Shown here in pieces: positions 10,890 through 60,370 of a stretch of DNA of 64,000 nucleotides. The stretch covers positions 62,001-126,000 of IMG/VR virus record IMGVR_UViG_3300045921_000730; one strand, 5' to 3'. Position 1 is the first letter of the stretch; each line of letters opens with the position of its first letter. The notes below the pieces were generated by a model, which was not told the origin of the DNA, searched no databases, and saw only the letters and a program-made list of their open reading frames with translations. The position numbers and the translations under genes are program-made.

Positions 10890-11296
10890 TTGAAAAATTG
10901 TATTGTCGAAACAAATGAATAATGCTTAGTTGTTGGAAGTATTATATAATTATGTTGTGACAACATGGCATTACTTTCCATTGGTTTTTTGCCTGGAGAC
11001 AAAGACCATGTAATATGGTAAATCTTACCATCTTTTCTAATTGTTGTGCCCTCAACTTCAACAACCAATGCTTCAACACCATTAATGTCTTGATATCCAA
11101 CAACTACAATTGTTGGAGACCACAAGTGTTGAGGTACCTGATTGATAGCACTAGAGGGAACATCAAACTCATATGTGACGTGATGAGCAACAACACGATC
11201 ATATTTTGGCGGAAACAAATCTAACAGCTCGCTTCTGACATTGTTGGGAAGAGGATATGCAAGATATCCTTGTTTTTTAAGGTGTTGTAATTTCAT
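10886..11296 (-). CDS. 2H phosphoesterase-like protein
   Basis: Two HxT motifs (HHVTY, YHITWS). Confidence 0.65.
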   Translation of the reverse strand: MKLQHLKKQGYLAYPLPNNVRSELLDLFPPKYDRVVAHHVTYEFDVPSSAINQVPQHLWSPTIVVVGYQDINGVEALVVEVEGTTIRKDGKIYHITWSLSPGKKPMESNAMLSQHNYIILPTTKHYSFVSTIQFFN

Positions 11297-11424
11297 ATTA
11301 ATTCCCGCAAGGAAACCTGATGTTCTTTAGACGTCAGGATGAATTGCGGACCTTTCATTAGTTAAATTGAAAAATTCTAACGGAGCAGGAAAACCGCGTT
11401 GTCTTTAGCTACGCGGTAGTTTAT
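11297..11424 (+). mobile_element. ORF-less IS200/IS605-type mini-element inserted in an ATGA stop/start overlap
   Basis: Left-end hairpin GGAAACCTGATGTTCTTTAGACGTCAGGATGAA, right-end hairpin ..GCGGTAGTTTAT; removing it gives minus-strand GGA-CTA-TGA overlapping ATG-AAA. Confidence 0.8.
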
Positions 11425-11939
11425 AGTCCGAGTTTCCTTAGTTTTTTAATCGTATCTGCGGCGCTTGTGTGTAAAATACCAATACCCCCTGCTGCAACCC
11501 AAGGAACAATTGATTTGTTTCTATCATCAATTAATATGCTGGTTGGTGTAGCAAACCGTGCCTTGTCTTTACTATTACGAACGAGATGAACTTTTGTTTG
11601 ATCAGTAATATGCAAGTGTTTTGCAACCCATGCACGCTTTTCGGGAATAGCAGCTTTAATGTGGCCTGTTGCCGAAAGAATTTCGGGGTTATATTTTTTT
11701 ACATAGTTCCATAGCTCCATGGCATCAGGTAACGGTGGCATTCTACCCCAAATTTCATTACCTTTCATTGCTTCTTGCTCAAGACTTTGCCAAAATTTAC
11801 GTTTATTTTCTTTTGCGTTCCATTCATTAGGTTTCATTCCAGTAATTTCTTCAGCGACACGATCAAAATCTACTAAAACGCCATCTAAATCAACATATAT
11901 TTTATATATTTTTTCTTCAAAAATCTGTTGTAATTTCAT
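11421..11939 (-). CDS. HAD-family 5'(3')-deoxyribonucleotidase-like protein
   Basis: DLDGVLVDF, ILSAT, K, ILIDD motifs; start placed at ATG 11939. Confidence 0.8.
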   Translation of the reverse strand: MKLQQIFEEKIYKIYVDLDGVLVDFDRVAEEITGMKPNEWNAKENKRKFWQSLEQEAMKGNEIWGRMPPLPDAMELWNYVKKYNPEILSATGHIKAAIPEKRAWVAKHLHITDQTKVHLVRNSKDKARFATPTSILIDDRNKSIVPWVAAGGIGILHTSAADTIKKLRKLGL

Positions 11940-11952
11940 TTCTTCGGCCCTC

Positions 11953-11989
11953 AAAAAGCAAGTGGAGAACCTTAACTCCACTTGCTTTT
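11953..11989 (-). terminator. Hairpin terminator downstream of nrdJ (possibly bidirectional)
   Basis: AAAAAGCAAGTGGAG...CTCCACTTGCTTTT inverted repeat. Confidence 0.7.
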
Positions 11990-12008
11990 ATTTAGCAATA
12001 GTTAATTT

Positions 12009-15000
12009 TTAACCACATTTACTGGAACCACAATCTGCACACTTTTCGCATCCTTCCTGATAAATGATGTTATGAGATCCACAGTTTTGGCAGACTTTAC
12101 CTTCAATCTTCTCACCGTCCTTAATAAAGGATGATAGGTATTTCTTGATTGAAAACAAGAACGAACCTGCATACGCGTCTTCAACTTTATCAAGAGTTGT
12201 TACGATATTACGAATTAACACACCATGACGAAGATTGAGTGAAATCATACGAGCGACCTTTGTAACATTATTATCACCTGCAATCTTTTCGAGAACTTTG
12301 TTGATGTGCTTTTCAGGAATATTCTTCGTACGTGCAAGATCTGTTAACAACTCAACGGCATTGTTGGTTAATGTGTTCTTTTCGTGACTGTTTGTATGAA
12401 CAAAGAAACCAAACGGGCGTGTTTTGTTATCATCCCACCACAAAACCGTAAGATACCATTTTTTACCTTCTGCCTTAAGTGTTTTCACAGTTGCTGGTGC
12501 ACTGTCAGGAAGTTGTACATCTTCAAGAACGATTTCTTCATCGATGTCACTAATATTTTTTTCGTCTTTAGCAGCAAGAACTGTTGTCATTGTTCCTGTA
12601 CGATATGTAGTAACACCTTTAACATAACCTGAAATATATGCATCAAGGTAAATGTTTTTGAAATCTTCAAAGCTATAATCGTTTGGAACATTAACGGTCT
12701 TACTCATAGCACTATCGACCCAACGAGCAAATCCCTTCAAATCATTTACATGATCTTGAACGCTCATACCAAGAGCGGTTGCAGCCCAGTCTGCTGTCGG
12801 ATCCCATTCGCCGATCTTTTTCATAAAACGAACACCATAATCTTCACATAACACTTCCTTTGTAAGACCACGATTCTTGTCAATTTTATAGACTGTACCA
12901 TCGGGTGCGACGCCACGAAGAATTTCTTCGTCACCCTCTTTAGTAAATTTAAACATTTCTGTCTCATGCCATGCACCCTCATACCACTTTGGACACACAT
13001 CAGCAATTTCTTCCGGCATTGTGTTTACGATTACTGTACGAATGTATTCATGTAAAAACACTGGTTCAAGACCACCGGAAACCACATTTGCTAAAATAGA
13101 AGTGTTTCCCGTAGGTTGAATTGAAAGAAGTGAACTATTACGAATACCTGTTGTGCGAAGTTTTTCCATATATTCGTCCGAAAGATTAAGCAACTTTATA
13201 AAAGGACCTTCCGCATGCTTCACAGGATCACAATAAGAAAACTTACCTTTCTCGACAGCCAAATCAATTGAAGCTTCATAAGCTGTTCTGGCAATTGTAC
13301 TCATTACTTGTTCACGAAGTTGATTAGCGCGATCTGATGCAAAGCGAGCTTTCAACATATAAAGCGCTGACCCCCAGCCTAAAATACCAACGCCAATACG
13401 ACGCTTGTTTTTAATTGAATGTGCATATTCGGGAAGTGGTGCATTTGTCAAATCGTTAATATTATCAAGAAAACGAACAAGATATTTTGTATACTTCTTG
13501 ATTAATTCTAGATCAAACCCTGAACGATCCGAATTAACGAATTGTGTTAAATTCAAAGAACCAAGATTACATACACCAGAAGGTGCTAATGTCTGTTCGC
13601 CGCAATTTCCTGTATAACACCACTCAGTAGGAAATACATGTTCATTATGCATGACACTAATATCCCACACATCTGCAGATTCAACAGGCTTAACAGAAAC
13701 TACTTCAACAAAGTCTAAATTGTGGTGGGTTCTTTTATCAGACACTTGACTAATAATATTTTTAAGTTTTTGTTGTTTAACTGGATGAGAAATATCAAAA
13801 ACGTTAATAAATTTTAAAACTGCCTGTCCACCAACAGCAACATCCCAGCGATCATATGATTTATTATATTCTTCACCATTTGGAAACGATACATTTTTTG
13901 TCGTTGTATTCCATATCATTGCTGGAACCCCTGCAAAACTAATTAGTTTTGCAAATTCTTGTGCTAAATCTTTTCGCGAAGTTGTTAATGTAATTTTCAA
14001 ATTGTTTGGATCATCGCTAACACATCCGTCCGCGCTCAATAAACCATCAACGAATCCTTTGATATATTGATCGTTGCTTTCCCAAACACTTTGTGGAATT
14101 TTTTTATTACCAGGAGTTAATTTGTACTTGTTTAATAATATATCCACTAACTCCTCGTCGCTAAATTGAAAATACAATTCACTAGCGCCATAATTTTGTC
14201 GTTGAATTAATGTTGATGGTAATTTTTTCATTCTGTTTACTATAGATAGTACTCGTTCTGCCATTGAACGTTCTTGCATACTAAATGCAATACCACAATT
14301 GTAGCGACCATCAGACAATTCACTGATCCAACCATCTCCAAAGAAATATCCAACAAAGAATCCTTCATCATATGTTAGGGTAAGATCACCATAGATACCA
14401 ATATCTTCATTTCTATTCAATGGAATAAGATCTCCAATTTTAAGATCTTTGGTATCTACCTTATAGATGCGTTTCATCTTTGAATCATACACAGGCCAGC
14501 GATGTTCTCTAGTTGCTCGAATCATTTTATTTGCCCCAAAAGAAATTTCTAACAATTCTTGATTCTTTCCAGATAAACGACACGAAGCTAGAGCCCATGT
14601 ACCATCCAAAGATTTCACCTCAAATTGTTTTCCTTCTAGTGTTTCAATAGGAAAAATTCCTTGTTTTGTATGAACAAGAGTACCAGCTGGCATTGATGGA
14701 TTTGTTGCAAATACTGTTTCTGCATAATTTAATGGTAAGAAATAATTAGCACGATCAAGAAACAATACGCCTGGCTCAGCACGATTGTAAGTGCTTTCCA
14801 TAATCAAATTCCATAACCATGAAACAGAAATTGTGTTGTATACTTTTACAGGATATCCCTTTGATTTCCACAACTTAATATTTCCATCCCAATCAGTTTT
14901 GTATTGAGGATGTGTGGTGTCGGGAAAAATTAAATTCCACTTATCCAATTCCATGCGCTCTTGTTGTAAAACAGTATTGTTTGTATCGTCTGTGTTTTTT

Positions 15001-17294
15001 AAAATAGAATCAATTTCATTAATACGAACAACGCGCTCCATAAAATCATCTGTACAATTTACAGACACATTAAATTTTGTAAGACGACCCGGTTGTTGTT
15101 TTGCTGTAACAAATTCAACAATATCTGGATGCCAGCAATTATGAATAAACACACCATTAGCTGCGAAATTATGATAATCAGGCATCGAAATATCAAACGC
15201 TTCTTGTTCAATACTTTCTTCAACACGAATGATATGTCGACTACCAGAAACCGACAGATCAAGGTAATCGTTTAGCATTCTCTTGTTCAGAGCACAGAGA
15301 CTGTCGTTGTTTTGTAAATCCTTTGCTTTTTTAAATGTTCCATCACTTAACATAAACTCGTGATCTGGAGTACACTCAATAAAGTCATCATTGTCAAAAA
15401 CAACTTTGATTGTTTTCTTTACTCCCTTCGACCAAACAAGAAGAGCCTGACGAACATATACATTACCTAAACCGTCAGTGCAGTAAAGGAAGGGGTTTTT
15501 TCCAACCAGCTCTTTTACAGGAATCTTTCCTTCAGTAGTATTGATTGGGGTATTTCCTCCAATGCAGTCCAAAACGCCCATCATGGCACCCTTACGGATT
15601 TTTCCCTTTGCTTTTGTGTTGTTGCTTTTCTTACCAGATCCTGAAGTAATAATTTCAGAACTTTTATCAAAAAGTTCCATATACTTTACAGCACCGGGTG
15701 TCTCCACACCAATGCCGTGAATAAAAGCGCCACGCGGCCGAATGTATGAGAAGTTTTCTCCCCAACCACCTTCCGACTTTAGAGTATGTGCTTGTGCACG
15801 AAGATGTGATAGGATACCGTCCAAGCTGTCAGCATCATGTTCTACACGGGGACCTACATAACAATTGTGGACAACCACATTATTAACAACGTAACTTTCA
15901 TCTTCGTTAACAGAAATGTTAAAAACATAACCACTATACCATTCATCGGCCCGTTCAGGTTCAACCACGAATCCAAAAGCAGCTTTTTTTGGTCCAGTTG
16001 TTGAATCTTTTTTAACAGTAAAATTCAATCGATCATCCTCGTAGACTTTACTCATTTGCTGTCTAAATTCTTTAGTAAATGTTGCACCAGCAGATAGTCT
16101 TTTTCCTCTTAATCTACAAGGAATACCTACTATTGTCATTAATGTTTGAATTTCTGTTAATAGCTGTGAATTAATCAATTCTATATGAACCTCTCCTTGT
16201 TCATCGACAAACCCATCGCCATCAAACACGCCCAACAAAAAGCTTTGTTGTACGGATGAAGGGCTATTCCAGATTACTTCTGGAATTGACTTCGTGTCAA
16301 AACCGGCACCTACCAAACGATGTAATACTGTTGCAATAATTTGTGATACTTTCCTGACATAGGTTGTGTTATTTGAACTGTAAATTATATTTGGTGTAAT
16401 ACCAAATACTTGTTCAAACAATTCAACCATATAATCAACATGAGATGTTTCTTTTGAAGAATTGTAGGCAATATTAAATGCGTCAACCTCATACAGTGAA
16501 GTTTGATTATTTTTGAACGTGCAACCATCAGCAACAAATCGACCGAGCAAATACGCAAACTTAGAATCAACATCAATGAAACGTTTTACTTCATGGCCAT
16601 ACTTAACCCCTGTTGCTCCTTGTCCGCCAACGTAATGTTTATTTGTTTTTATGCTTGTTTCATTAAACACAATCATGTTTTGATTAACATAATCCGCAAG
16701 AAGTTCAACCAAATCCATCACAACAGGAGATTTATCGCTAGTATGTTGGGCTAAAAACAACGTTTTCGTTTCTGATGATACTGTCCATGTGTCGTTTCCT
16801 TGATAATAAGGATGTTCAGGCGTACTGATAATATCTCCAGAAAGATAATTGGATGAAAATCGTTGCACGGGGCCTGTATAAAAGCGTGACATTGTGTTAT
16901 CAACACGACGATATCGTCCTTTATGAGTAAGGACCCAATCGCCCACTTCAACATCACAAATTTTCTTTGGACCGTTAGACGTTAACACCTCAACGTCCGG
17001 ATGAAAACAATTCATCAGCGTGGTGCCACCCCACTCTGTTCCTGCGTTAGCATAAATACGACCACCGGCTGTTGCTTTAAAGTTTGTTAAAAGATCATAA
17101 AACTTTTCCGTCCACTCTTTTCGTAATTCTTCTGTTTTTTCAACAGAAGCTGTTGCTGATGCCACGCGATAAAGCGTATCATTAATTGTTAAATCATTAT
17201 AGTCCTTATATGTTGATGCCCAAACTTCTTCAGAAAAACTGTCTTGAAAAGTTGTAGAAGTTATATCATTTGTTTGTTGTTTTGTTCGTGACAT
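12009..17294 (-). CDS. nrdJ: Class II (B12-dependent) ribonucleotide reductase with three inteins
   Basis: After removing inteins: GGRIYANAG, TLMN|CYV, EPGVLFLD, TNP|CGEQ, CNLGS, IQPTG, SKTVN, KGVTTYR; C-terminal CQNC..CADC..KC. Confidence 0.93.
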   Translation of the reverse strand: MSRTKQQTNDITSTTFQDSFSEEVWASTYKDYNDLTINDTLYRVASATASVEKTEELRKEWTEKFYDLLTNFKATAGGRIYANAGTEWGGTTLMNCFHPDVEVLTSNGPKKICDVEVGDWVLTHKGRYRRVDNTMSRFYTGPVQRFSSNYLSGDIISTPEHPYYQGNDTWTVSSETKTLFLAQHTSDKSPVVMDLVELLADYVNQNMIVFNETSIKTNKHYVGGQGATGVKYGHEVKRFIDVDSKFAYLLGRFVADGCTFKNNQTSLYEVDAFNIAYNSSKETSHVDYMVELFEQVFGITPNIIYSSNNTTYVRKVSQIIATVLHRLVGAGFDTKSIPEVIWNSPSSVQQSFLLGVFDGDGFVDEQGEVHIELINSQLLTEIQTLMTIVGIPCRLRGKRLSAGATFTKEFRQQMSKVYEDDRLNFTVKKDSTTGPKKAAFGFVVEPERADEWYSGYVFNISVNEDESYVVNNVVVHNCYVGPRVEHDADSLDGILSHLRAQAHTLKSEGGWGENFSYIRPRGAFIHGIGVETPGAVKYMELFDKSSEIITSGSGKKSNNTKAKGKIRKGAMMGVLDCIGGNTPINTTEGKIPVKELVGKNPFLYCTDGLGNVYVRQALLVWSKGVKKTIKVVFDNDDFIECTPDHEFMLSDGTFKKAKDLQNNDSLCALNKRMLNDYLDLSVSGSRHIIRVEESIEQEAFDISMPDYHNFAANGVFIHNCWHPDIVEFVTAKQQPGRLTKFNVSVNCTDDFMERVVRINEIDSILKNTDDTNNTVLQQERMELDKWNLIFPDTTHPQYKTDWDGNIKLWKSKGYPVKVYNTISVSWLWNLIMESTYNRAEPGVLFLDRANYFLPLNYAETVFATNPSMPAGTLVHTKQGIFPIETLEGKQFEVKSLDGTWALASCRLSGKNQELLEISFGANKMIRATREHRWPVYDSKMKRIYKVDTKDLKIGDLIPLNRNEDIGIYGDLTLTYDEGFFVGYFFGDGWISELSDGRYNCGIAFSMQERSMAERVLSIVNRMKKLPSTLIQRQNYGASELYFQFSDEELVDILLNKYKLTPGNKKIPQSVWESNDQYIKGFVDGLLSADGCVSDDPNNLKITLTTSRKDLAQEFAKLISFAGVPAMIWNTTTKNVSFPNGEEYNKSYDRWDVAVGGQAVLKFINVFDISHPVKQQKLKNIISQVSDKRTHHNLDFVEVVSVKPVESADVWDISVMHNEHVFPTEWCYTGNCGEQTLAPSGVCNLGSLNLTQFVNSDRSGFDLELIKKYTKYLVRFLDNINDLTNAPLPEYAHSIKNKRRIGVGILGWGSALYMLKARFASDRANQLREQVMSTIARTAYEASIDLAVEKGKFSYCDPVKHAEGPFIKLLNLSDEYMEKLRTTGIRNSSLLSIQPTGNTSILANVVSGGLEPVFLHEYIRTVIVNTMPEEIADVCPKWYEGAWHETEMFKFTKEGDEEILRGVAPDGTVYKIDKNRGLTKEVLCEDYGVRFMKKIGEWDPTADWAATALGMSVQDHVNDLKGFARWVDSAMSKTVNVPNDYSFEDFKNIYLDAYISGYVKGVTTYRTGTMTTVLAAKDEKNISDIDEEIVLEDVQLPDSAPATVKTLKAEGKKWYLTVLWWDDNKTRPFGFFVHTNSHEKNTLTNNAVELLTDLARTKNIPEKHINKVLEKIAGDNNVTKVARMISLNLRHGVLIRNIVTTLDKVEDAYAGSFLFSIKKYLSSFIKDGEKIEGKVCQNCGSHNIIYQEGCEKCADCGSSKCG
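13605..14696 (-). other. Intein 3 of NrdJ (364 aa, LAGLIDADG; Ser1, ends GN)
   Basis: NP|SMPAGT...GYFFGDG..GLLSADG..VWDISV..YTGN|CGEQ. Confidence 0.88.
15138..15566 (-). other. Intein 2 of NrdJ (143-aa mini-intein)
   Basis: LD|CIGGNT..CTPDHEF..FDISM..FIHN|CWHPD. Confidence 0.9.
15864..17009 (-). other. Intein 1 of NrdJ (382 aa, LAGLIDADG)
   Basis: MN|CFHPD..TPEHPY..GRFVADG..GVFDGDG..VVHN|CYV. Confidence 0.92.
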
Positions 17295-17295
17295 T

Positions 17296-17715: not shown

Positions 17716-17887
17716 AAGGGTCCTTATTTACAAATTGATTTTTTAAACCGAAAAAAATAATAATAAATCAATATATTATTCTCGTACTTTTTTAATGTTT
17801 TTTCAACTAGTTGTTTTTTTCTTAAAAAACAATTTAAAAAACCTAATGTTCTTGGACAACTAATATGTAGGAGCAATAAATTCTCTG

Positions 17888-18085
17888 TTGACTTTTACTT
17901 ACCGATATAGTAATCTATTAACGTCTTGAATAAAAATATCAAGATTTTCAATACCATAAGAATTACGGGAATTGATGTTTGTGGAGATGTGAATTCTATT
18001 GTAAAGAATTCAACCCAGAAAGTTAGTTATTCTATAGAATAACTAACAGTTGATATAATTTTCAAAGATCCGCTAAATTTAGCGG
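17888..18085. promoter_or_regulatory. Divergent intergenic control region with perfect palindromes
   Basis: TTGACT at 17888; 26-bp palindrome at 18022-18047; 16-bp palindrome at 18070-18085. Confidence 0.45.
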
Positions 18086-22601: not shown

Positions 22602-22627
22602 GTGTTAATGATATTTTAATAAAAATA

Positions 22628-22690
22628 ATTCAAAAAAACCTGATGTTCATACAGTTACCACAATTCATCCTAGGATGAATTGTGGACCTC
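22628..22690 (+). mobile_element. Rearranged remnant of a family-1 left end
   Basis: AAAACCTGATGTTC, then palindrome CCACAATTCATCCTAGGATGAATTGTGG built from the left end's 3' half. Confidence 0.5.
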
Positions 22691-22864
22691 TCTTCTGATA
22701 ACCAAATCATATTTGGTACAAAAAATACTATTCGCCATAAATACACATTATATAACAAAAAACAGTTAAAGCTATGCCAACTCATTTCTTCGAATACAAC
22801 AAGTGATAGTTCAGTAGTTGACAAATATTGATAAATATTAAAAATTAAATAAGAGAATTCTACT

Positions 22865-24895: not shown

Positions 24896-25140
24896 AGAAC
24901 AAACAGTTCTATCCAAAACTACCAGTAGTATCGTATCTAGAGGACCTATGGAAGGAAACCGAGATACATTTGGTGGAAACATGGAAAGAATTGCATTCTT
25001 GGGTCAAAAACTCGAAATTGAAATATCGAGTTCCGATTCCAGATGAATCGGTTTTCAGAATTTTCCAGTCGCCAGCTAGTTTGGTTGGTGTTCTATAGAT
25101 TTGTATTACTTATATGAATTTATATGGAAAATTTATTTTA
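24880..25140 (+). mobile_element. ORF-less mini-derivative of TnpB family 2
   Basis: Left end AGAAGCAAAACTGAA fused to the last ~245 bp of the element; follows ATATTA. Confidence 0.88.
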
Positions 25141-25155
25141 CAAGGAGAGAACTTA

Positions 25156-31080: not shown

Positions 31081-31200
31081 ATGCAAGTTAGAGAAGGTAT
31101 AGAAATGTCTGATGAAGATGCAGCTTTATATGATAAACACAAAGCTGCAATTGAATATTATGACAGATTACAATATGTTTACAAAATTAAATTAAACTCT
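31081..31200 (+). CDS. DNA polymerase C-terminal gene, exon 1 (missing from the ORF track)
   Basis: GGAG SD; MQVREG...QYVYKIKLNS is the first half of motif B. Confidence 0.85.
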
Positions 31201-34490: not shown

Positions 34491-35392
34491 AATATTTAAT
34501 TCTTGACATCAGTAATCTTTTGTATAGAACTTTCTTTGCTCACACGACCGAAGACGATATTACTATTACTGGACTAGCAACACATTCAGCATTAGTAACC
34601 ATTAACAAATATTTTAAACAACATAAACCCGACAAAATCGTAATGTGTTTTGATAGAAGTTCGTGGAGAAAAGTTTATACAAGTTCTGATCTTTGTGTTT
34701 CAAAGAAACCTTACAAAGGAAACCGAAGACAAAAGATGTCTCCATCTCAACAAATGAAATATCAAAAATTCATTGATCATTTAAACGAATTTGAAAACTT
34801 AATTATTAAACACTCAACAATTATTACACTTGCAAAAGACTATCTCGAAGCTGATGATTTAATTGCTGGATTTATTCAAGCACATCCAAACGATGAAATT
34901 GTTCTTATTAGTTCCGATACAGATTTCGTGCAATTACTAAAATATAAAAATGTAAAAATTATTTCACCGAAAGATGATAAAGAACATAATTTGGAAGAAT
35001 ACAACAACGATCCAGATTTCTATTTGTTTTGTAAATGTATGAGAGGCGATCCAACGGATAATATCCAGTCTGCCTATCCGAGAGTTTCATCCAAACGCTT
35101 AAAAAAAGCATACGAAGACCCCTTTGAACGCGTTAAACTAATGAAAGAAATATGGTCAGATCACGAAAAAAGGGAGTTTGTTGTTGAAAAAATCTTTGAA
35201 GAAAATCAACTGTTGATTGATCTCGAAAAACAACCAGAAGAAATACGAAAACTAATCGATAAAACAATTGAAGAAGAAACCTCCAAAACAAAAAAATATT
35301 CACATTTTCATTTTATGAAATTTCTTGGAAAATATGAATTAGATGCGATTGCAAAAAACGTTGATCAATATATCAAACTATTAAGTCGGTGA
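34487..35392 (+). CDS. T4-type RNase H / 5'-3' exonuclease
   Basis: LILD, FD, YKGNR, EADD, SSDTDF, GDPTDNI. Confidence 0.9.
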   Translation: MKYLILDISNLLYRTFFAHTTEDDITITGLATHSALVTINKYFKQHKPDKIVMCFDRSSWRKVYTSSDLCVSKKPYKGNRRQKMSPSQQMKYQKFIDHLNEFENLIIKHSTIITLAKDYLEADDLIAGFIQAHPNDEIVLISSDTDFVQLLKYKNVKIISPKDDKEHNLEEYNNDPDFYLFCKCMRGDPTDNIQSAYPRVSSKRLKKAYEDPFERVKLMKEIWSDHEKREFVVEKIFEENQLLIDLEKQPEEIRKLIDKTIEEETSKTKKYSHFHFMKFLGKYELDAIAKNVDQYIKLLSR

Positions 35393-35463
35393 ACTACTGC
35401 AAAACTGAAGATTTCCTTGATGCACCCGAATCCCGCTTGTTCTTTAGACAAGTAGTAGTTCAG
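35389..35463. mobile_element. Back-to-back right-end remnants, each supplying the TGA of a convergent gene
   Basis: GTGAACTAC (minus-strand right end) holds the RNase H stop; GTAGTTCAG (plus-strand right end) holds the stop of ORF 35460-35915. Confidence 0.7.
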
Positions 35464-37518: not shown

Positions 37519-37527
37519 TATCGTTAT

Positions 37528-37757
37528 ATAATCAATTCAAGAAAACCTGATGTTCTTTAGACGTCAGGATGAATTGAATTGATTTTTGAAATAGACATGG
37601 ATAGAGATTTAAATGCTGCCATTAACATTCTGAAAGAAGGTATCAACCTTTTCAATACCGTAGGAACTACGGAAATTAACGCCTGTGGAGATATGAGTTC
37701 TGAAGTAAGGAACTCAGCCCAGGAAGCTAGTTGTTCTTTAGACAACTAGCAGTTCAC
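37528..37757 (+). mobile_element. Internally deleted family-1 TnpB element (left end, omegaRNA region, right end)
   Basis: Left-end hairpin shared with 11297; 37597-37757 matches 845-1005; the right-end TCA is the stop of ORF 37754-38284. Confidence 0.9.
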
Positions 37758-52800: not shown

Positions 52801-53253
52801 AATTGTTAAATAGTTTGGTTGAATGTTATTGGAAGACACCCAATAATAGTCTTGATAATTAACAAACATATCAAGGTTTATGGGAGGAATCCAGTTAAAC
52901 TCTTGAGCTTTCCCCCACTTATTCATTCTATCCTTATCAACACCGAGAAACTCGAGCTGTTTTTCAAACGACTTGAATGTTAAAACTGTTTCTGTGTTTC
53001 CTGCTCTAGTATATGCTAGCGGCTGAAGTTGAAACGCCTGAAGTTGTGGTGTTGGCTCCGGTAATTGACGACTGTTTTGTAATTGTGATGGTTCACCTAT
53101 TAAACCTGAAACAAAAGTTGTGTCATCTTTCGTCAAAAATCTATTGAAAGATTGTTCGAATACACTTTGATTAACATCTGAATTATATACATCTGGCAGG
53201 TATTCAATTATATTTGTTCTTGGTTTGTTGTCGTTATCAGAGTTGCTAGCCAA
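40849..53253 (-). CDS. Giant (4134 aa) virion/baseplate protein with repeated beta modules
   Basis: TTG start with an AAGGAGG SD; follows the gp6-like gene; internal repeats. Confidence 0.75.
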   Translation of the reverse strand: MASNSDNDNKPRTNIIEYLPDVYNSDVNQSVFEQSFNRFLTKDDTTFVSGLIGEPSQLQNSRQLPEPTPQLQAFQLQPLAYTRAGNTETVLTFKSFEKQLEFLGVDKDRMNKWGKAQEFNWIPPINLDMFVNYQDYYWVSSNNIQPNYLTIENPCLKYQARTNVYQQLLNTYGSTFPIVEIDIVNNCIILDGRLDALFQPNAQIFIKPSTLTPNINIDNKYYTILSVEYFEPEFCSEEENLLENKTKLCVEQDFVLKSSTQPITTPQTIIGTWWFDTTNEKLMSWNGTTWVETNPVITSVVSLSEILDIFIKETNCICYGDYGWDLSLWDNNTSDFQTYLQPYSHPTEASWISQNGPPTISALWYDTNQDALFQYNGTTWVLIFYNFSQRVLDMSLNDVLWDLTVSCFDQLITPSQWSTENRWIHKSQLSTTQNVKRAQVPILEYDSRVELNSWTKRTYQWKYRSEIGQDFQSVNSQPTLLELTPVIDYIAVETPPASGNWFIYLYNNTSSVQKDIDWSEIFVPGFVFRIRDDGILNKTYTVEYSLVREPLPTDPAGVQGRHLITIVKISENTFTAPLVGGGINKVRIEPTNTSVGDLWRGYHAHWVLDVNNFKDHPTDTQQENPILKRALSSTQAPFSYTGTTNVGPITVGQYFQTTTVNVPTTNIKLDVSLQYTQTSTLLIVGVVSGVNGTFTVLGDYTSVFSTETPFIVRNNTGGANGIYSVQSSTLSFGNTIITVNGTIPLTATPDGNIVGGTSSFALANQESLAVYVNGIRQYGNYQEITNVGIPIYTAVGTTTYNTQTFEFVSGIVFDQPLQQFDVVQIQIAPHAYNDLGKSFVPIRTIENESDFNASLIAGTQPVYKSTIEYFKTEQVKKSFNQYPLFNVYDVCTNEVIGAKRLFGFLESETAPVNPHIQRRVVAENQTSNFVFEQTLVERDDGKTYAFRLNDERVPNLTFWYNEKTNQLKYRNNNVWEMSFVYFDTNDFIRVSKPYVGEIPPPYLVNNEYSIWYDTKNRIVKQALSNVWQEIAWPEYDNPLNSPTPQGLLIEKADPTLTTIWRSVNQYTYNSSGPWYQWSEGSYTPQWVDKNRQPLTIGDPNGDWEIPKQWRFNIEHKNKQQISYADLITHFQTIIDAQQTTNVNILPQQEWKYWVGGTIKEYNDSYDTLISAINEQKTTPLSVIEFAQNQYDNGLLTIKQLYLNSFISLMTRTTNDDIYNQQGVINQNILNQYESNDFYGFVYGDTSAFNQLTETGVRNWISTPPMFGLSEKFKPHIIIDKGLNIYEVYCHDGHREQINLSLTERDAIIRLLINTPDSREPDTTYGVINSSAPPNTFASFQSYFQTRTGVYWYKNVERILYRFEAIISTTPPLFTDSNGNELPDGIVYYNSFLNQMYEKQGLTWVAVGPANNVSLGWVEKDIRKILCELIYSIEEKLYQVSPDYKNLVFDYSSLTPDVGEQAVYDEKQKQQFYSFVENNKIVFPFENLQYNAQDAFTWNYINSTITTPPTTFVSPLIAASWQELYTRWYGTPYPHLEPWKLQGYHDKPLWWDDEYLDLTGNRRWIYNHATLTGMWQNIRVGIVPAGRTYPDGSLSTGNPIADNQVLPTYIYFSVNISDDCLTSSGATTPCGSTSAVYSPDDLLPPYFALTTLGPNATPTYVRSLFTSFSGEIVAPGSNFVYGEGGPTEWLWSVSSEYVYHKMIVAFKMQPVRFMHYAFGLNFTRVNNLQIEQQLCQVYSHEDALFHGDVFQNALFTARGLNQWYVNNNRFSGYDTNGDFRNYWVNWDPKLSYQFSGIVDTTSLDINNRFYDIDQQDYNVVLSNMGAIDDVWLDAFQVTILKTPPKIVQYNNQTQWRMSLDVLSLVSKPIFYYDVKQYPFIVDPITNTASAFAFRITGALSNAKLIEVGGDQVNHFVPQVEITISGSTANDGVYSVSSSVYDPSSDKTRITLNELLPSSIADGVVDINDVELPWETGQVVFITSSQILPAPLTTSREFYIIKVGAKGFRLADSIANANANIAIDIVNQGNGEQYVGEVDSSFFVFGGVGPSRELWFHYALDKTKIRTFSPPSTIAGFQRLINIIDGYKAYQEDKNVRYNLVEVYETDPDTQRTVSWQLEIERFIDWAYQTRGINSRVEDRFNFSVQSIPGTQGYKQNGFQVLKSLTDITGLQSITYSFLLSVDGSPFTSVAIDGSLSQTYQQLITEINAQLTLLAIPAIASFETFNNGAVRITSNSTGPFSSVNIVDVDLFGSLFDSTPLQNSVNGSGSLFAFSDQVPAWVAGTAVKVGTTGSLPTGLSADVTYYVHNSTIPGLFELSTTKTKTPSSAVVVSSAGGGLQFISQFTTRTQFPSFEINPMRNNVWITTPQGVLANIISGPYEDIRIKQSIFDQYGRILTPDKLLVYREDKRSRISIRPEIPNDLKPSIAGIDDPYNYIHMGGGHFFITGYQHVLIFNDYTSGNFLVFDQFKGLQAQRFSISYYEKNDFSLRPTLGGYYLLGNQYERNIEGQITDMRNYYSVYNTNDFSPVVDYARNLIGFNKSLPYLDLLNINKKSQFEFYRGAIQSKGSTNSITAFINNKRFISANVDEAWAWKIAEYGDAREKVYPELKLFASDGTLEDVRFEFLTNNEASQSQFVEQAKSQRFEVISFRDDTRWYEYPDQKRTLNGSVLFLDAKVVSRMTIFVKNVPPLEEQANRIDYWYDTSTLTLRKFDSTISGPYLTKWIPVDGIVRASDMYYVKLGQPCDTVRVIRKTLSGFPGYQEVLFNVPLFDAKATGLNPLINYTTSITFNNLQTINISVLGSQVQTFGELIDFLNSKITPYGRAQMYNDTIRITNAFKGSSSDVSISILDLLFNSLDDYLSVQPSQPGVDSFNDINEYTAESLIVDGGGTDGFIRINSQTLAFDFTAFYDILEIYCLRPSFASNNPGKLLDKISNVVISEVPYWHPAYNKHYYLTEHNINVFKDSDPAKYTNTLIFDDVSLNPWNEVEVGTIWANSSYLDYLPYFDDKIYTDVNDRLFNWGIFSDIGNTKVYQWIQSTVPPQQYTGIALVQEADTSISSELKLNGTPKTTIFKRMREPLVGDVVFLNPIQQTQGRGYQDVQFAIPVNGTTDTGIINDNTPGYQEVEWRTTSGTPFVINAATGIVWNSQSTPPYTAIIRVDGIDYNVSVGSVPNFGGLVSAINQDLDTIAVASIVAGRLRITSLSSSENSSVQILDINLFNSLEVGVATYAYQDVFVGNNKTSASPTGLVGPTTYFHPIDVNGNYFDISVLGSSAPIYGMLIEEINADITGATASLVNGNIRIRSNVLGSAGSVTIGESLTVLETNPNGGSNAITSGGGSPWINPNSSLALDNISTTCTRSGSGGSKNPVTYPPAPQQTLTIRGFNFNIPVSATILGIEAQVRKFYNTSGSVGSPIVNDFIVQLRKDVLGPVGNNLASGAWPLSFSTTTYGSPSNLWGTTWTPADLNNSNFGIDITASLGLTVPAASTGSVSANIDYVTIKVYYTTTGGTLFTTALSGFVAVGLPIPGQDAYFATLIPPVNGTNGTPLTMTVVVDGVPVPITIDGDASQTFTELIANINSAANGTFSVELTPSGNLRFISSSVGTNSTIALIDNNLISSIVGVPSGLLTPVTFLLSVPGDYGWIEVPYNSKDPFEENDLTLFTSTDVLPTNIQQSVKYSVTNLQNLPIVAPTIQRFRIASNETLTNVNLIDAGSGILSVVPAFKLKNWLRKPLVKQSFNPNVDFATLTPSTIQLNSSFDKNDLVDVMVNGKIKLFKLLVNSSNQITLPSYTFNRSDFVTVVRQEPALTTEQINFDPDTEDDGTIHEQFKEDYEYTTITIADVNNNNRLTELYYYWVENTTYKNPNDPLSMPPIEIARTLRSIPISYLVVQKPQDDPSITETYGYGAIYGIVYSSPYLYNNFNVIPIFYRQAVLRNAASYIRTDDRYTLRFTRDLTLRDSLENGPSSVNLKNTHTEWKLIRQEQPFNIDRVLWDRLTESLIGFKIDDPTIRVPSLERELYDAVHGTDTQYGLGDDQTFVNGQLAKKTILNYLQRPDINFAPVDINSFFAQYSFDTPANIIAAMNAIYNTFGYKHVNAIWFEVLLDAFSTKSKYKELFKTSWIALTGVRILEVSGLFEE

Positions 53254-53319
53254 CTTCAGGCCTCCTTCTTATACTTTATTTTATTATTTATTAATAAGGA
53301 AATGAGCGAAAAACACGCG

Positions 53320-56826: not shown

Positions 56827-57796
56827 TTTTATTCCTTACGATTTATTAAAATATTTATTAAATAACATTTTTAAAAAATGACACAAAAAACAAAACTTAC
56901 AGATAAAATGATAAAGGATTGGATCGCAACGGGGTTAAATTCAAAACTCGTAGCTCAACGACATAACATCAGCTACTATACATTCCTTCCGCTGATCAAA
57001 GATTATATTAATACCTTAACGATAGACAATCTGATACAACTTGCTGAAAATAAAAACATTGACTTTAAATTCATTTCGCAAACAACAGCGTTATACAAAC
57101 AAATTTATGACGAAACATCATTTTTAAAACCAGAAAGTTCAATACGACAACGGCTGTTTCATATCAAACACAAAATAACCAGTGCACCAAAATGTAAATG
57201 CTGCAACAATTTAACAAACTGGGATAATACTCTAAAAAATTATAGAACATATTGCAGCATCAAATGTCAGTCAAATGACCCAGATGTCATTCTATCAAAA
57301 AAACAAACAAACGTAAAAAACAGAGGCGTCGAATATCCTGCACAAGATAAAAATGTACGCGAAAAATATAAAAAAACAATGATTAATCGATATGGGATAT
57401 CTCACGTAAACAAAACAAATAAAACCGAATCAATTAATAACTTTGACCTATTACACGACTTATATTGGGTACAACATTTATCAACGTTTGATATTGCCGA
57501 ACGGTTCGGAGTCAGCCAATCTTACATAGCAAAACTACTTCAATTATATAATATTGAACCACACACAAAATCTTGCTTTGAACAACAAATTGTTAATTTT
57601 TTAAAACAAGATTTAAACATAGATGTAATCCTGAACACAAGAAAAATAATATATCCAAAAGAAATTGACATTTTTTTGCCCAATTACAACATTGCAATAG
57701 AATGCAATGGATTATTTTGGCACAGTGAAATAAGTGGCGGAAAAAGTAACAAATACCACATCGAAAAAACTATATTATGTCAGCAAAAAAATATTA

Positions 57797-59148
57797 TTAG
57801 AAGCAAAACTGAAATTGTATAAATACGTTATAACCAATATAAATTTCTAAGAATGATCACCTACAAACTTCCAATTCAGCTAACTGATGAAGAAAAGAAA
57901 ATGGTCCTTGAATTCCAGAGGATCCAGTCTTCAATGATCCGTTCTGCATATAAGCAAGCCGAATTTGGTTGTACCGAAATTTCTATAAGACAGGAAATTC
58001 GAGATAGGTTCAAAAGTCAGCTTGATTCCTGGTTCCAGCAATCTGCTGTTAAATATGGAATAGGGATGTTCAAATCAGATCATGAAACTGGTCGATCTGG
58101 TCGAATCTTTGGTGGCAAAGGCAATCTGATTAGACGTGCAAAAAGGCTCATTTCAAAAGAAGAATGGAAACAAAAACGACTTCTTCCGTTGTATCTGATT
58201 GGTGAAGCTCCAGCCAAAGGAAATCGCAAGTTTGAGTTCCATGAAGATTATGTCATTTTTAAGCCATTCAAAGGGACCAAGATCAAAATCGATCTTCCTA
58301 ACATGAGGAAGAACTGGTCGAGAATGTGGAACCAGCTCTTGGTCATGGTTTCAGAAAAACAAATACCAATCACTGTTTCTTTGACCACCGACTTCATATC
58401 CTTTTCTTTTGATGATGTTAAGGTAAAACAAGAGATCAGAAAGATTCCAAAACCAATCAAGAATAGATATGCAGGCATTGATCTGAACCCAAATTATATT
58501 GGCATTTCTGTTTTTGATGGAACAAAACTGATTGAAACCAGATTGTTTTCATTAAAGACATTAACTGGAAAGAATGCCAGTGCTTCAAAACTTGAACATG
58601 AAACAAGAGAAATTGGGCATGCAATAGGTAAGTGGCTTCAGCATCTACGAGTTGACAAGTTGTTCATCGAAAAACTAGAATTCAAACAAGGCAATAAGGG
58701 AATTGGAAAGAACTTCAACCGCTTAACACAAAATCAATGGAAGAAAATAACCCTAAAGGCGATCCTAGCTAAGTACTTCAAACTGTATGAAATCAATGCT
58801 GCTTATAGTTCGACCATTGGTAACATTCTGCATCCCGAATTACCAGACCCGGTAGCAGCTAGTACTGAGATTGCACAACGAGGCTACCGGCTTGTGATAC
58901 TCAAGAACAAACAGTTCTATCCAAAACTACCAGTAGTATCGTATCTAGAGGACCTATGGAAGGAAACCGAGATACCTTTGGTCAATAACTGGAAAGAACT
59001 ACATTCTTGGGTCAAAAACTCGAAATTGAAATATCGGGTTCCGGTTCCAGATGAGTCGGTTTTCAGAATTTTCCAGTCGCCAGCTAGTTTGGTTGGTGTT
59101 CTATAGATTTGTATTACTTATATGAATTTATATGGAAAATTTATTTTA
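57797..59148 (+). mobile_element. TnpB-only element, family 2, copy 2
   Basis: Same ends as 2468-3824; follows ATATTA. Confidence 0.9.
57853..59106 (+). CDS. tnpB: TnpB-like nuclease (family 2), close paralog of 2529-3782
   Basis: Same length (417 aa) and motifs. Confidence 0.8.
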   Translation: MITYKLPIQLTDEEKKMVLEFQRIQSSMIRSAYKQAEFGCTEISIRQEIRDRFKSQLDSWFQQSAVKYGIGMFKSDHETGRSGRIFGGKGNLIRRAKRLISKEEWKQKRLLPLYLIGEAPAKGNRKFEFHEDYVIFKPFKGTKIKIDLPNMRKNWSRMWNQLLVMVSEKQIPITVSLTTDFISFSFDDVKVKQEIRKIPKPIKNRYAGIDLNPNYIGISVFDGTKLIETRLFSLKTLTGKNASASKLEHETREIGHAIGKWLQHLRVDKLFIEKLEFKQGNKGIGKNFNRLTQNQWKKITLKAILAKYFKLYEINAAYSSTIGNILHPELPDPVAASTEIAQRGYRLVILKNKQFYPKLPVVSYLEDLWKETEIPLVNNWKELHSWVKNSKLKYRVPVPDESVFRIFQSPASLVGVL

Positions 59149-59782
59149 TGTTGTTTCATATATTTGAAAGCGAATGGATAGAAAAACAACAAATTGTAAA
59201 ATCTAGATTAAAATCAGCGCTGGGGTTCAATAACAAAATATATGCAAGAAATTGCAAAATACAATCAATTACATCACAAGAAGCAGAATTGTTTTATAAT
59301 AAACACCACATCCAAGGTTCAACAAAAAATCAATTTAACTATGCACTAATCAATAACAACATGATCGTTGCTTGTATGAGTTTTAACAAACCACGTTTTA
59401 CAAAAAAATATGATATTGAACTTACGCGCTTTTGCACTTTATCAGATCATAACGTTGTCGGTGGAGCCTCTAAGCTGTTCAAACATTTTATCAACAAACA
59501 TCACAACATAAACACAATCATCAGTTATAGTGACAAACGTTGGTCGCAAGGTAATTTATACAAAACTTTAAACTTTTTGTACTCACATACGTCTTCACCT
59601 AACTATTGGTACTTCAAATGTCTACCACACTTATTCTCACGCATGCAATTTCAAAAACATAAACTGAAAACATTGTTTGAAAATTATAATGATCAATTAA
59701 CAGAATGGGAGAACATGAAAAATAACGGATATGATAGAATATGGGATTGCGGGAATGATGTGTGGGTATGGACGAGAAATGC

Positions 59783-60160
59783 TTAAGCGTTCTCAAACTG
59801 AAGATTTAAATTAATCTCATCGACAAAATCAAGTTCAACATACAAAAGACGTGCCGTAGCATTTACAGCATTCGAATCAAAATTTGGTGTAATTTTTAAG
59901 TCCAACAACTTCACTCGCGGATCATAATTAAAAACAAGTTCTAAATCTCTTCTCAACTGTTCCAATGTTCTATTATCGAGTGGCTCAAAAACAATATCTG
60001 GAATCGACGTGCCAAAATCAGGCATCATAACACGTTCACCACGACGAGTATAAATATGATTTAGTAAATCCATTTTTACTAATTCGATATCAGTAAGTAC
60101 GAATGTTTTGTTTCTTTGATATTCAAACGAGGAATATCCGCGATATAAATTCTTTTTCAT
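59783..60160 (-). CDS. Baseplate wedge protein (gp25-like)
   Basis: TRRGERVMMPDFGT..FEP..YDPRV. Confidence 0.9.
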   Translation of the reverse strand: MKKNLYRGYSSFEYQRNKTFVLTDIELVKMDLLNHIYTRRGERVMMPDFGTSIPDIVFEPLDNRTLEQLRRDLELVFNYDPRVKLLDLKITPNFDSNAVNATARLLYVELDFVDEINLNLQFENA

Positions 60161-60370
60161 ATAATTTCCACAAGGAAACCTGGTGTTCTTGAGACGTCAG
60201 GACGAACTGTAATTCCTTTCTTTAAGATTAAAACAAACAGTAATATGAAAAATACTAACTTCCATATATACTATCATATTTATGATTTTGTTAAGCAACT
60301 ATATTTTAGCCGCGGTTCGAACTTATCGAGCTGTCTGAATTAAGTTAAGCAACAGTTAAAATAAATTCAT
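60161..60370 (+). mobile_element. Degenerate family-1 mini-element in the gp5/gp25 ATGA overlap
   Basis: Left-end-like GGAAACCTGGTGTTCTTGAGACGTCAGGACGAA after TTCAT; ends TTCAT; removing it gives AG-ATGA-AAA. Confidence 0.65.

What the first reader, a model, noticed from the sequence alone, without database searches (positions are those of the whole stretch)
11293..60370. TnpB-family elements that insert at stop codons and ATGA overlaps and rebuild the stop with their own right end
Seen in sequence: family-1 elements follow TCAT/TTAT and end in TCAC, TCAT, TTAT or TCAG, which read NTGA/NTAA on the other strand. In five cases the element end is the stop codon of a neighbouring gene: 11421 (HAD), 35390 (RNase H), 35460, 37754 and 60367 (gp5). 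Deleting 11297-11424 or 60161-60370 restores a clean ATGA stop/start overlap (GL*/MKL and RR*/MKK). At both sites the left end places GGGA/GGAA 6-7 nt before the downstream ATG, a possible replacement SD. Inference: matching target and end motifs let the element enter a gene-dense genome without changing proteins. Survivor bias could produce the same pattern.
Basis: partly seen in the sequence, partly recalled or inferred. Interest (0 to 1): 0.85.

Follow-up and report, generated by a model that had tools for sequence, protein, structure and literature searches.

The report
TnpB mini-transposons at phage stop codons
A large T4-like phage from hot-spring mats is full of small IS200/IS605-type TnpB transposons whose insertion motif and right end both read as stop codons on the other strand, so some sit exactly on gene ends without changing the protein; this looks like a by-product of ordinary transposon chemistry plus selection rather than a new mechanism.

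Summary
The elements are real. The 244-kb phage contig holds 7 full TnpB genes, about 11 copies of a 205-nt MITE, and about 30 hairpin-bearing right ends. All have IS200/IS605-style subterminal hairpins, and the right-end stem is supported by covariation. They follow T(T)YAT and end in ..AGTTYAN. The right-end TYA is the stop codon of an opposite-strand gene at window 11421, 35460 and 37754, and probably at 35390 and 10249.

A near-identical relative (L012) carries a MITE inserted exactly on the gp5 stop. gp5 is 100% identical and its TGA comes from the MITE's right end.

- Window 60367-60370 is an empty target, not a shown element end. Only about 60161-60215 is element DNA.
- A second filled/empty pair shows an insertion that rewrites a protein tail.
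- The main family (A) sits in intergenic spacers, with 0 of 11 copies on stops.

Enrichment at stops is absent for all hairpin-bearing right ends (5/30, p=0.22). It is about threefold only for antisense-oriented copies (p about 0.001-0.014). Avoidance of coding sequence is overwhelming (p about 7e-11).

Best reading: the target motif and right-end cleavage motif match for mechanistic reasons, and purifying selection does the rest. No TnpA was found in the contig.

The parts
1..1005 (+). 3' two-thirds of the TnpB-carrying element. The whole element is genome 61672-63005, so it starts 328 nt before the window. tnpB ends at 997 and the right end reads ..GCTAGTTGTT-cttta-GACAACTAGC-AGTTCAC.
   Evidence: 396-aa TnpB with OrfB_IS605, Cas12f1-like TNB and HTH domains. 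E=2e-70 to ISDra2 TnpB structures, with DVG, VEN and DRD motifs present. Left end follows TTAT.
1024..1068 (-). Solo family-C right-end remnant (GATGCACCCGAATC + hairpin), ending in a degenerate AGATCAT.
   Evidence: Inverted match to 35419-35452 (I2).
1449..1654 (+). Family-A MITE (206 nt). It follows TTAT just after the tmRNA terminator T-run and ends in AGTTCAT.
   Evidence: One of 11 aligned copies; boundaries.
10248..10342 (-). Diverged family-B-like element between the topoisomerase II subunit gene (stop 10249-10251) and the gene starting at 10343. Its left end abuts TCAT (= ATGA on the + strand). Its right end has a hairpin CACAATA..TATTGTG and ends in TTAA.
   Evidence: Left-end match with 3 mismatches; sequence. 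Deletion gives an ATGA overlap. Present in all strains laid. Right-end assignment is probable only.
11297..11424 (+). 128-nt MITE with a family-B left end and a TnpB3/A-type right end ending in TTTAT. TTA at 11421-11423 is the stop of the NT5C/HAD gene. CAT at 11294-11296 is the start of the 136-aa gene.
   Evidence: Fixed in the strains of four metagenome runs.
17825..18054 (+). Decayed TnpB-element relic: a left-end-like stretch, a tnpB 3' fragment with stops, and a right end ..CAGTTGAT. It lies in a divergent intergenic region. Left boundary is approximate.
   Evidence: D3, D5; fragment with 2 stops.
22621..22822 (+). Decayed element between two + genes. The left-end hairpin is disrupted and two right-end termini lie in tandem (AGTTCAG, TAGTTGAC). 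Boundaries are approximate.
   Evidence: (D5).
35389..35463 (+). 75-nt unit between convergent genes. It has a family-C right end (hairpin + tAGTTCAG, TCA = stop at 35460-35462) and, at its left edge, an inverted right-end terminus GTGAACTAC whose TGA is the RNase H stop (35390-35392).
   Evidence: The relative L034 has the RNase H stop at the same codon with no such unit.
37528..37757 (+). 230-nt internal-deletion derivative of the TnpB element, 99% identical over its last 161 nt. It follows TTAT. TCA at 37754-37756 is the stop of the 176-aa minus-strand gene.
   Evidence: (D3). The relative L034 has the same convergent gene pair overlapping by 4 nt with nothing between.
60161..60215 (+). Family-B left-end remnant directly abutting the ATG (60158-60160, minus strand) of the gp25-like gene.
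60216..60366 (.). Spacer that is single-copy in this genome, with a late-promoter-like CATAAATA on the minus strand. Not shown to be element DNA.
   Evidence: No repeat beyond 60228; no right-end hairpin; retained in L012; relatives carry ATAAATA spacers.
60367..60370 (+). TCAT, which is the gp5 stop (TGA) on the minus strand. It is an empty allele of a family-A insertion site; L012 has TTAT + a 206-nt MITE here.
   Evidence: Alignment A1.

Best explanation
These are IS200/IS605-type single-strand transposons: TnpB-only (IS1341-like) elements plus their non-coding MITE/PATE derivatives and decayed solo ends. They have colonised a T4-like jumbo phage.

Each end carries a subterminal hairpin with the same loop and the same GAAA/GGAA tract 5' of the stem. 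In this family, by established IS608 mechanism, such a tract guides the transposase to the left cleavage/target motif and to the right cleavage motif. Left target (T)TYAT and right terminus TYAN therefore share T-Y-A for mechanistic reasons. This step is inferred.

T-Y-A is the reverse complement of TAA/TGA. An element that lands antisense on 'A+stop' therefore hands the gene an identical-frame stop from its own right end. This is shown by one natural filled/empty pair.

Insertions elsewhere in coding DNA are purged. The survivors fall into three groups:
- sense-oriented copies after terminator T-runs (family A);
- antisense copies on stops and ATGA junctions (families B and C);
- a few copies that only alter C-terminal tails.

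The purine-rich complement of the left end (GGGAA/GGAAA, 6-7 nt upstream) may serve as a weak ribosome-binding site for the gene whose ATG is left behind. This is inferred and untested. Transposition needs a Y1 TnpA supplied in trans. The intact TnpB nucleases probably retain or home the copies.
For: - Seven TnpB genes plus two fragments, with an intact RuvC-type motif set in TnpB1.
- Left and right hairpins recur, with covariation in the right-end stem.
- 11 aligned MITE-A copies all follow TTAT. Eight family-B copies follow TTCAT or TTAT.
- Two filled/empty pairs have junctions at the canonical positions and no target duplication.
- The L012 MITE sits on the gp5 stop with gp5 100% identical.
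- Right end = stop at 9961, 11534, 73424, 97463 and 99757, and in fragments at 13654, 22093, 97389 and 215202.
- 16 of 19 mapped insertions are non-coding against 15.5% of sites, p about 7e-11.
- Orientation splits by family: family A is sense in 10 of 11 copies, while the copies on stops are antisense.
Against: - No Y1 transposase (PF01797) and no serine recombinase (PF00239) in the 244-kb contig. The agent of transposition is therefore unseen. The contig is about 72% complete, and the 288-kb source contig could not be searched.
- Among antisense copies, stop sites are about 3-fold over-represented relative to orientation-matched non-coding T(T)YAT sites (p 0.001-0.014).
- 2-3 of the 9 eligible TTCAT-type ATGA overlaps are occupied, against 1-2 of 78 intergenic TTCAT sites. 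Simple neutrality of intergenic sites does not predict this.
- In both empty alleles the target tetranucleotide differs from the filled allele. Plain transposition plus drift does not predict this either.
Confidence: 0.72

Rival explanations
1. One reading: the match between target motif and right end, and the SD-like left end, are adaptations. They let the element enter stop codons and ATGA overlaps of a gene-dense phage genome harmlessly, so these sites are preferred niches rather than leftovers.
For: - Antisense copies sit on stops in 5/9 to 7/11 cases against 18% expected.
- ATGA overlaps are occupied 2-3 times among 7-8 TCAT-target copies against 3.5-5.8% expected.
- Five family-B left ends abut genuine ATG starts and place GGGAA/GGAAA/GAGAGAAA 6-7 nt upstream.
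- The L012 pair shows the stop rebuilt exactly.
Against: - Sharing T-Y-A between target and right end is, from memory, also true of IS608 (TTAC/TCAA). If so it is ancestral chemistry rather than a phage adaptation.
- Family A avoids stops (0/11).
- Two insertions alter protein tails.
- Start-adjacent placement is not enriched over non-coding TCAT sites (5/8 against 36%, p=0.11).
- The SD-like core is only 3 nt.
- Counts are small, cases were chosen after the fact, and gene calls are home-made.
Confidence: 0.2
2. TnpB-guided homing between co-infecting phages, not only transposition, shapes where copies are seen. Filled alleles cut and convert empty alleles that keep the TAM and guide match, so the only empty alleles left are TAM mutants.
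For: - Both empty alleles found differ from the filled allele inside the 4-nt target: TCAT against TTAT at the gp5 stop, and TCGT against TCAT at genome 131923. Background divergence is 1.0%, giving a naive P of about 0.0016.
- TnpB1 has an intact catalytic motif set.
- MITE-A retains about 150 nt of tnpB-3'/right-end sequence, where the guide-RNA scaffold lies in known TnpB systems.
- No transposase is present in the contig.
Against: - Only two pairs.
- The 49-nt copy at 131874 has no room for a guide-RNA scaffold.
- Local divergence next to that site is raised (3 differences in about 50 nt).
- Copies at more than 19 different loci still need a transposase.
- TAM specificity is untested.
Confidence: 0.2
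3. The hairpin units are not mobile DNA but conserved regulatory structures at gene ends (terminators or REP-like RNA stabilisers), and they resemble each other through common function.
For: Many copies lie just after stops or 20-40 nt before starts. The complement of the A-type right end is a GC-rich hairpin followed by TTTT (read).
Against: - Full-length copies carry tnpB between the same ends.
- There are presence/absence polymorphisms with precise junctions between 99%-identical strains.
- Relatives at about 50% identity lack them at orthologous junctions.
- The terminator scan finds none at 10200-11500.
Confidence: 0.03

Closest known systems
IS200/IS605 family, IS608/ISDra2 type (single-strand 'peel and paste' transposons with TnpB)
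   Same: - Subterminal hairpins on one strand at both ends.
- No terminal inverted repeats and no target duplication.
- Insertion 3' of a fixed tetra- or pentanucleotide.
- The right end stops a fixed 7-8 nt after the hairpin.
- tnpB runs to within a few nt of the right end.
- TnpB1 aligns to ISDra2 TnpB at E=2e-70.
   Different: No tnpA anywhere in the contig. The target is (T)TYAT rather than TTAC or TTGAT (those two are from memory). Seven diverged tnpB copies and dozens of derivatives sit inside one phage genome.
IS1341-type (TnpB-only) elements and palindrome-associated transposable elements (PATEs/MITEs of IS200/IS605)
   Same: Non-autonomous. They keep only the two hairpin ends, with or without tnpB or its 3' guide-RNA region. 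They are multicopy and near-identical.
   Different: They are hosted by a virus. Sizes go down to a 49-nt single-hairpin fusion of left and right ends. Chimeric ends occur, such as a B-type left end with an A-type right end at 11297-11424.
REP/BIME elements with RAYT (domesticated IS200-like Y1 transposases)
   Same: Short hairpin repeats that pile up just after stop codons and between convergent genes. Inverted pairs of ends occur (genome 13612-13654; window 35389-35463).
   Different: No RAYT/Y1 gene was found, and the copies here have distinct left and right ends with tnpB-bearing parents.
Free-standing homing endonucleases of T4-like phages (seg/mob) and TnpB homing (Meers et al. 2023; review PMC13565253)
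   Same: Selfish nuclease genes wedged between conserved phage genes. Strains are polymorphic for presence or absence, and spread during co-infection is possible.
   Different: Targeting here would be RNA-guided, and the element also has transposon ends. Homing is not shown here.

Membership tests
IS200/IS605 (TnpB-bearing) transposons | Subterminal imperfect hairpins at the left and right ends on the same strand, and no terminal inverted repeats | tested here: met
   Left-end and right-end hairpin scans. Right-end stem 88% paired, 8/10 pairs compensatory, 0/500 shuffles.
IS200/IS605 (TnpB-bearing) transposons | Insertion 3' of a specific 4-5 nt motif without target-site duplication | tested here: met
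   11/11 family-A copies follow TTAT. 8 family-B copies follow TTCAT or TTAT. Two filled/empty pairs show no duplication, though the target differs by 1 nt in each.
IS200/IS605 (TnpB-bearing) transposons | Y1 (HUH) TnpA transposase | tested here: not met
   PF01797 absent from the 244-kb contig, with positive controls. The contig is about 72% complete and the host is unknown, so supply in trans is not excluded.
IS200/IS605 (TnpB-bearing) transposons | TnpB with RuvC-like D-E-D motifs and a zinc finger | tested here: met
   Pfam OrfB_IS605 + Cas12f1-like TNB + HTH. Alignment to TnpB structures with GIDVG, VVEN, CxxC..CxxC and DRD present. Checked for TnpB1 only.
IS200/IS605 (TnpB-bearing) transposons | Guide RNA (omega/reRNA) spanning the tnpB 3' end and right end, with the guide read from the flank | not tested
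   No Rfam family hit at gathering threshold. No RNA data. MITE-A keeps the relevant 150 nt.
IS200/IS605 (TnpB-bearing) transposons | TAM equals the transposon target motif | not testable with these tools
   Needs a TAM-library cleavage assay.
MITE/PATE derivatives | Short non-coding copies sharing the ends of an autonomous or tnpB-bearing parent, in multiple copies | tested here: met
   Window 37528-37757 is 99% identical to the ends of the TnpB1 element. MITE-A shares the right end and tnpB 3' region of the TnpB at genome 231895-232989.
MITE/PATE derivatives | Presence/absence polymorphism between close relatives | tested here: met
   Two of about four sites differ across 17.9 kb shared with a 99%-identical strain.
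IS607 family (serine-recombinase TnpA + TnpB) | Serine recombinase next to tnpB | tested here: not met
   PF00239 absent. The 99-aa ORF upstream of the TnpB at genome 48560-49696 has no Pfam hit. My suspicion of a remnant rests on memory only.

The most novel reading that the evidence does not exclude
The phage's TnpB elements are specialised residents of gene junctions. Their ends supply a stop codon to the gene upstream and a ribosome-binding site to the gene downstream, so they can split ATGA-coupled gene pairs harmlessly. Their TnpB/guide RNAs drive homing between co-infecting phages, leaving only TAM-mutant empty alleles. That would be an RNA-guided counterpart of T4 seg/mob homing endonucleases, with visible resistance alleles in wild populations.
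Probability: 0.2. Interest if true: 0.75.

Novelty: new member of a known kind. Interest (0 to 1): 0.5.

Why it matters
This is a natural case, with a filled/empty pair, of how an IS200/IS605-type element can sit on a stop codon of an essential phage gene (the gp5 baseplate hub) at no cost. The stop is the reverse complement of the motif the transposase needs at both cleavage sites. That helps explain how such elements persist in genomes with almost no spare DNA. It also warns annotators that the last codon of a gene may belong to a transposon.

One virus holding seven diverged TnpBs, their MITEs, and strain-level presence/absence differences is also a good natural system for asking whether TnpB homing operates between co-infecting phages. 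I found no paper in four full-text searches that describes stop-codon rebuilding by these elements. TnpB genes in phages are themselves common: 613 of 50,697 records.

Tried and rejected
- Megablast of window 10000-14000 against GenBank phages: no match.
- Relatives of the NT5C/HAD protein in IMG/VR: none.
- Relatives of the 136-aa protein: only 45-47% identical, with different neighbours.
- Exact-pattern scan of JGI metagenome contigs for an empty HAD junction, and for the A-type right end: 0 hits each, so that collection probably lacks these samples.
- IMG/VR scan for the A-type right end: only the L012 contig.
- Read laying on window 8500-12500 in four runs: Logan contigs break inside the repeat. 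All strains carry both elements, and there is no joint that skips an element.
- Eight exact-protein look-ups for flanking genes returned only the same strain, or the already known 3300045922 contig.
- The 288-kb source contig could not be searched for TnpA.
- The promoter/terminator scan gave nothing beyond chance.
- My first structure string for the right-end hairpin was off by 3 columns and was corrected.
- I suspected that the ORF at genome 49723-50022 is an IS607 TnpA remnant and that the ATG at 131923 or 42243 starts a gene. There is no Pfam support for the first. The other two ORFs are only 17 and 35 codons.

Full report
WHAT THE WINDOW IS. The window is bases 62001-126000 of a 244,293-bp linear IMG/VR viral contig (35.6% GC, CheckV about 72% complete). 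It is found in hot-spring and microbial-mat metagenomes. The gene content is that of a T4-like phage:
- gp5-like baseplate hub, gp25-like wedge protein, T4-RNase-H-type 5'-3' exonuclease, topoisomerase II subunit, and NT5C/HAD-type deoxyribonucleotidase;
- family-B DNA polymerase interrupted by a group I intron;
- ATAAATA late-promoter-like boxes in relatives.

THE ELEMENTS ARE REAL. A left-end motif recurs five times in the window, against 0.01 expected. Self-comparison of the genome shows many repeat families. The genome has seven full-length TnpB genes, 35-42% identical to TnpB1, plus two fragments. The one ending at window 997 has all three TnpB Pfam domains. It aligns to ISDra2 TnpB structures at E=2e-70 with the catalytic and zinc-finger motifs in place.

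Five of the seven TnpB genes are followed within a few bases by the same kind of right end: a GGAA/GAAA tract, a 10-bp stem with loop CTTTA or TTAA, then (T)AGTTYAN. Across 11 diverged right ends the stem is 88% paired, 8 of 10 pairs change on both sides, and no shuffle out of 500 reaches this (one search was mis-registered by 3 columns).

Left ends have an inner hairpin with the same loop. It is flanked by GAAA and ATGAAT and by an outer stem that also co-varies by eye.

Non-coding derivatives share these ends:
- a 205-nt family-A MITE in 11 copies;
- window 37528-37757, an internal deletion of the TnpB1 element (D3, 99%);
- window 11297-11424, a 128-nt chimera of a B-type left end and the right end of another TnpB element;
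- a 49-nt single-hairpin fusion of left and right ends at genome 131874-131922;
- about a dozen solo family-C right ends.

No Y1 transposase and no serine recombinase is detectable in the contig, although the control genomes scored.

TARGET AND ENDS. All 11 family-A copies follow TTAT, and 9 of 11 follow TTTAT. Eight B-type left ends follow TTCAT and two follow TTAT. Right ends finish in TCAT, TTAT, TCAC or TCAG, and less often in TCAA, TGAC or TGAT.

STOP CODONS IN THE WINDOW. The right-end TYA is the stop of the opposite-strand gene at 11421-11423, 35460-35462 and 37754-37756.
- Removing 11297-11424 leaves ..GGA CTA TGA overlapping ATG AAA.
- Removing 37528-37757 changes AAG TGA to AAA TAA, so the protein still ends ..V E K.
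- At 35390 the RNase H stop lies in GTGAACTAC. This is the exact complement of the right-end terminus consensus but has no hairpin of its own. Similar terminus fragments are stops at genome 13654, 22093 and 215202, so I accept it as a probable relic.
A minus-strand B-like element at 10248-10342 has its left end abutting the ATG at 10343, and its TTAA end supplies the topoisomerase stop. Deleting it gives ACA TGA over ATG AAT.

Only about 60161-60215 matches other copies, and there is no right-end hairpin before 60370. A contig from another sample (L012/L035, about 99% identical, gp5 protein 100% identical) keeps this whole stretch. It also carries a complete 206-nt family-A MITE between it and gp5.

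On the element strand, L012 reads ..AAATTTAT|CATCTTCAGGG...GGTAGTTCAT|CTGCGCC and the window reads ..AAATTCAT|CTGCGCC. Window 60367-60370 is therefore an empty target site. gp5 relatives at 46-58% identity have a 50-60 nt spacer with ATAAATA before the next gene, not an ATGA overlap. The restored RR*/MKK overlap is arithmetically correct but unsupported as an ancestral state.

In L012 the gp5 reading frame runs ..CGC AGA TGA, with the TGA coming from the MITE's terminal TTCAT. The old stop, now ATAA, is left behind at the left end. The protein is unchanged.

A SECOND PAIR SHOWS THE LIMITS. Genome 131874-131922 (outside the window) is absent from L035. The filled allele reads ..GTTTTCAT|ATAATT...AGTTGAC|TTTCTTTT and the empty allele reads ..GTTTTCGT|TTTCTTTT. 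This right end is TTGAC, with no stop on the other strand. The insertion lies four codons before the stop of a + strand gene, whose tail changes from ..KENENE* to ..KESQLLDV*.

The TnpB1 element itself seems to have cut about eight codons from its upstream gene, which now stops in the left end's ATAA. So proteins are not always spared.

STATISTICS. I deleted 19 elements with defined boundaries, re-called genes with a simple codon-usage caller, and classified all 6,399 T[CT]AT sites:
- coding: 5,405
- intergenic: 786
- start-only: 101
- stop-only: 96
- ATGA overlap: 11

Family A: 10 intergenic, 1 in a doubtful call, 0 on stops. Family B: three ATGA overlaps (one being the doubtful 60161-60370), one stop, one beside a fragmentary ORF, one intergenic, and two in C-terminal coding sequence.

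Sixteen of 19 insertions are non-coding, against 15.5% of sites (p about 7e-11), so selection against gene disruption is very strong.

Right ends that are stops:
- 5 of 30 hairpin-bearing ends against 10.8% expected (p=0.22);
- 9 of 40 with fragments included (p=0.024);
- family B alone, 3/7 to 4/8 (p=0.03 to 0.007).

Orientation matters. Family A is co-oriented with its neighbours in 10 of 11 copies, typically just after a hairpin and T-run. The copies on stops are antisense to their neighbours. Among non-coding sites whose right-end side faces an antisense gene, 18% are stop sites. Observed values are 5/9 to 7/11 (p=0.014 to 0.001), and the 5-nt motif TTYAT gives the same result.

These tests use small, post hoc counts and assume that intergenic sites are neutral. 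In a T4-like genome full of promoters and ribosome-binding sites they probably are not.

MECHANISM. Shown:
- ends, target motif, lack of duplication, recent mobility;
- stop reconstitution in one pair and tail replacement in another.

Inferred from the established IS608/ISDra2 mechanism (Barabas et al. 2008, cited in PMC7290912; my recollection for the details):
- The tract 5' of each hairpin guides cleavage. Since both ends here carry the same GAAA/GGAA tract, the left target and the right terminus must resemble each other.
- From memory, IS608's TTAC and TCAA also share T-Y-A, so the stop-compatible geometry is probably ancestral to the family rather than invented in this phage.
- A TnpA in trans is required for new insertions.

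The left-end complement puts GGGAA/GGAAA/GAGAGAAA 6-7 nt before five genuine ATG starts. The match to a Shine-Dalgarno core is only GGA, whereas 133 of 229 confident genes have a 4-nt core. Function is untested.

AN UNEXPLAINED EXTRA. In both filled/empty pairs the empty allele differs from the filled one inside the four-base target: TCAT against TTAT, and TCGT against TCAT. The strains differ at 1.0% of positions overall, so the naive chance is about 0.0016. This is what TnpB-guided homing would leave behind, because empty alleles would survive only if the TAM is broken. But n=2, the 49-nt copy cannot encode a guide scaffold, and divergence is locally raised at that site. I record it as a lead.

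POPULATION DATA. In four metagenome runs the copies at 10248-10342 and 11297-11424 are present in every strain seen (about 1% divergent). Contigs break inside the repeat. Depth over the repeat is about 14x the flanks, matching the genome's own copy number, so no large extra reservoir is visible.

COMPARISON AND NOVELTY. TnpB genes occur in 613 of 50,697 GenBank phage records, the best being 39% identical to TnpB1 (Microcystis phage Mic1). MITEs in viruses have been surveyed (PMC6004678, PMC11602168), and TnpB homing is established. Four full-text searches found no description of stop-codon rebuilding by these elements.

I file the elements as new members of the IS200/IS605 TnpB-only/PATE kind. 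The stop-on-the-other-strand geometry is a neat consequence that I did not find described. Evidence that it is a preferred niche rather than a survivor pattern is modest.

Noticed in passing
window 60367-60370 vs L012; genome 131923-131926 vs L035: In both natural filled/empty pairs, the empty allele carries a substitution inside the 4-nt target (TCAT vs TTAT; TCGT vs TCAT). The strains differ at only 1.0% of positions (naive P about 0.0016). This could be TAM-escape from TnpB homing, or chance.
   Followed up: partly
window 1118-1441: Permuted (two-piece) tmRNA gene, with Rfam RF04321 at 121 bits and beta_tmRNA at 108 bits. It lies between the TnpB element and a MITE that landed on the T-run of its terminator.
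   Followed up: no
window 31189-31410: Group I intron (Rfam RF00028, 86 bits) interrupting a family-B DNA polymerase gene. The downstream exon, 31421-32485, hits DNA_pol_B.
   Followed up: partly
window 12009-17294 (minus strand): 1761-aa ribonucleotide reductase large subunit carrying intein and LAGLIDADG signatures, according to precomputed Pfam hits on the identical JGI gene.
   Followed up: no
window 2454-3826, 57787-59151 and 24888-25142: A 1.3-kb segment is duplicated at 90-95% identity, with a third partial copy. It holds a 417-aa ORF with no Pfam hit and a conserved 33-nt upstream box (D1/D2/D7/D8). Possibly another mobile gene cassette.
   Followed up: partly
genome 13612-13654 (outside the window): Two right-end termini form a perfect palindrome, TTGAACTACCGC-TAA-GCGGTAGTTCAG, followed by a third terminus that is the stop of gene 13651-14907. 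This is a REP/BIME-like arrangement of transposon ends.
   Followed up: no
window 11293-11302, 60157-60166, 37524-37533: The junction of the target's last T with the left end's ATAAT creates TATAAT, a perfect -10 hexamer pointing into the element. At 10338-10367 the scan scores it 11/12 with a TTGAAA -35.
   Followed up: no
genome 51426-51474 and 195345-195683 (outside the window): Elements are stacked directly after another element's right end: a 49-nt mini-copy follows the TnpB5 right end, and three A-type right ends lie within 340 nt. Right termini may themselves serve as targets.
   Followed up: no
window 40849-53253 (minus strand): A single 4134-aa ORF, and next to it a 1168-aa ORF. Neither was examined.
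   Followed up: no
genome-wide: Family-A copies are minus-oriented from 30 to 55 kb, plus-oriented from 59 to 233 kb, and minus again at 243 kb. This tracks the direction of the flanking genes. I could not tell whether it reflects transcription or the replication-strand bias known for IS200/IS605.
   Followed up: partly
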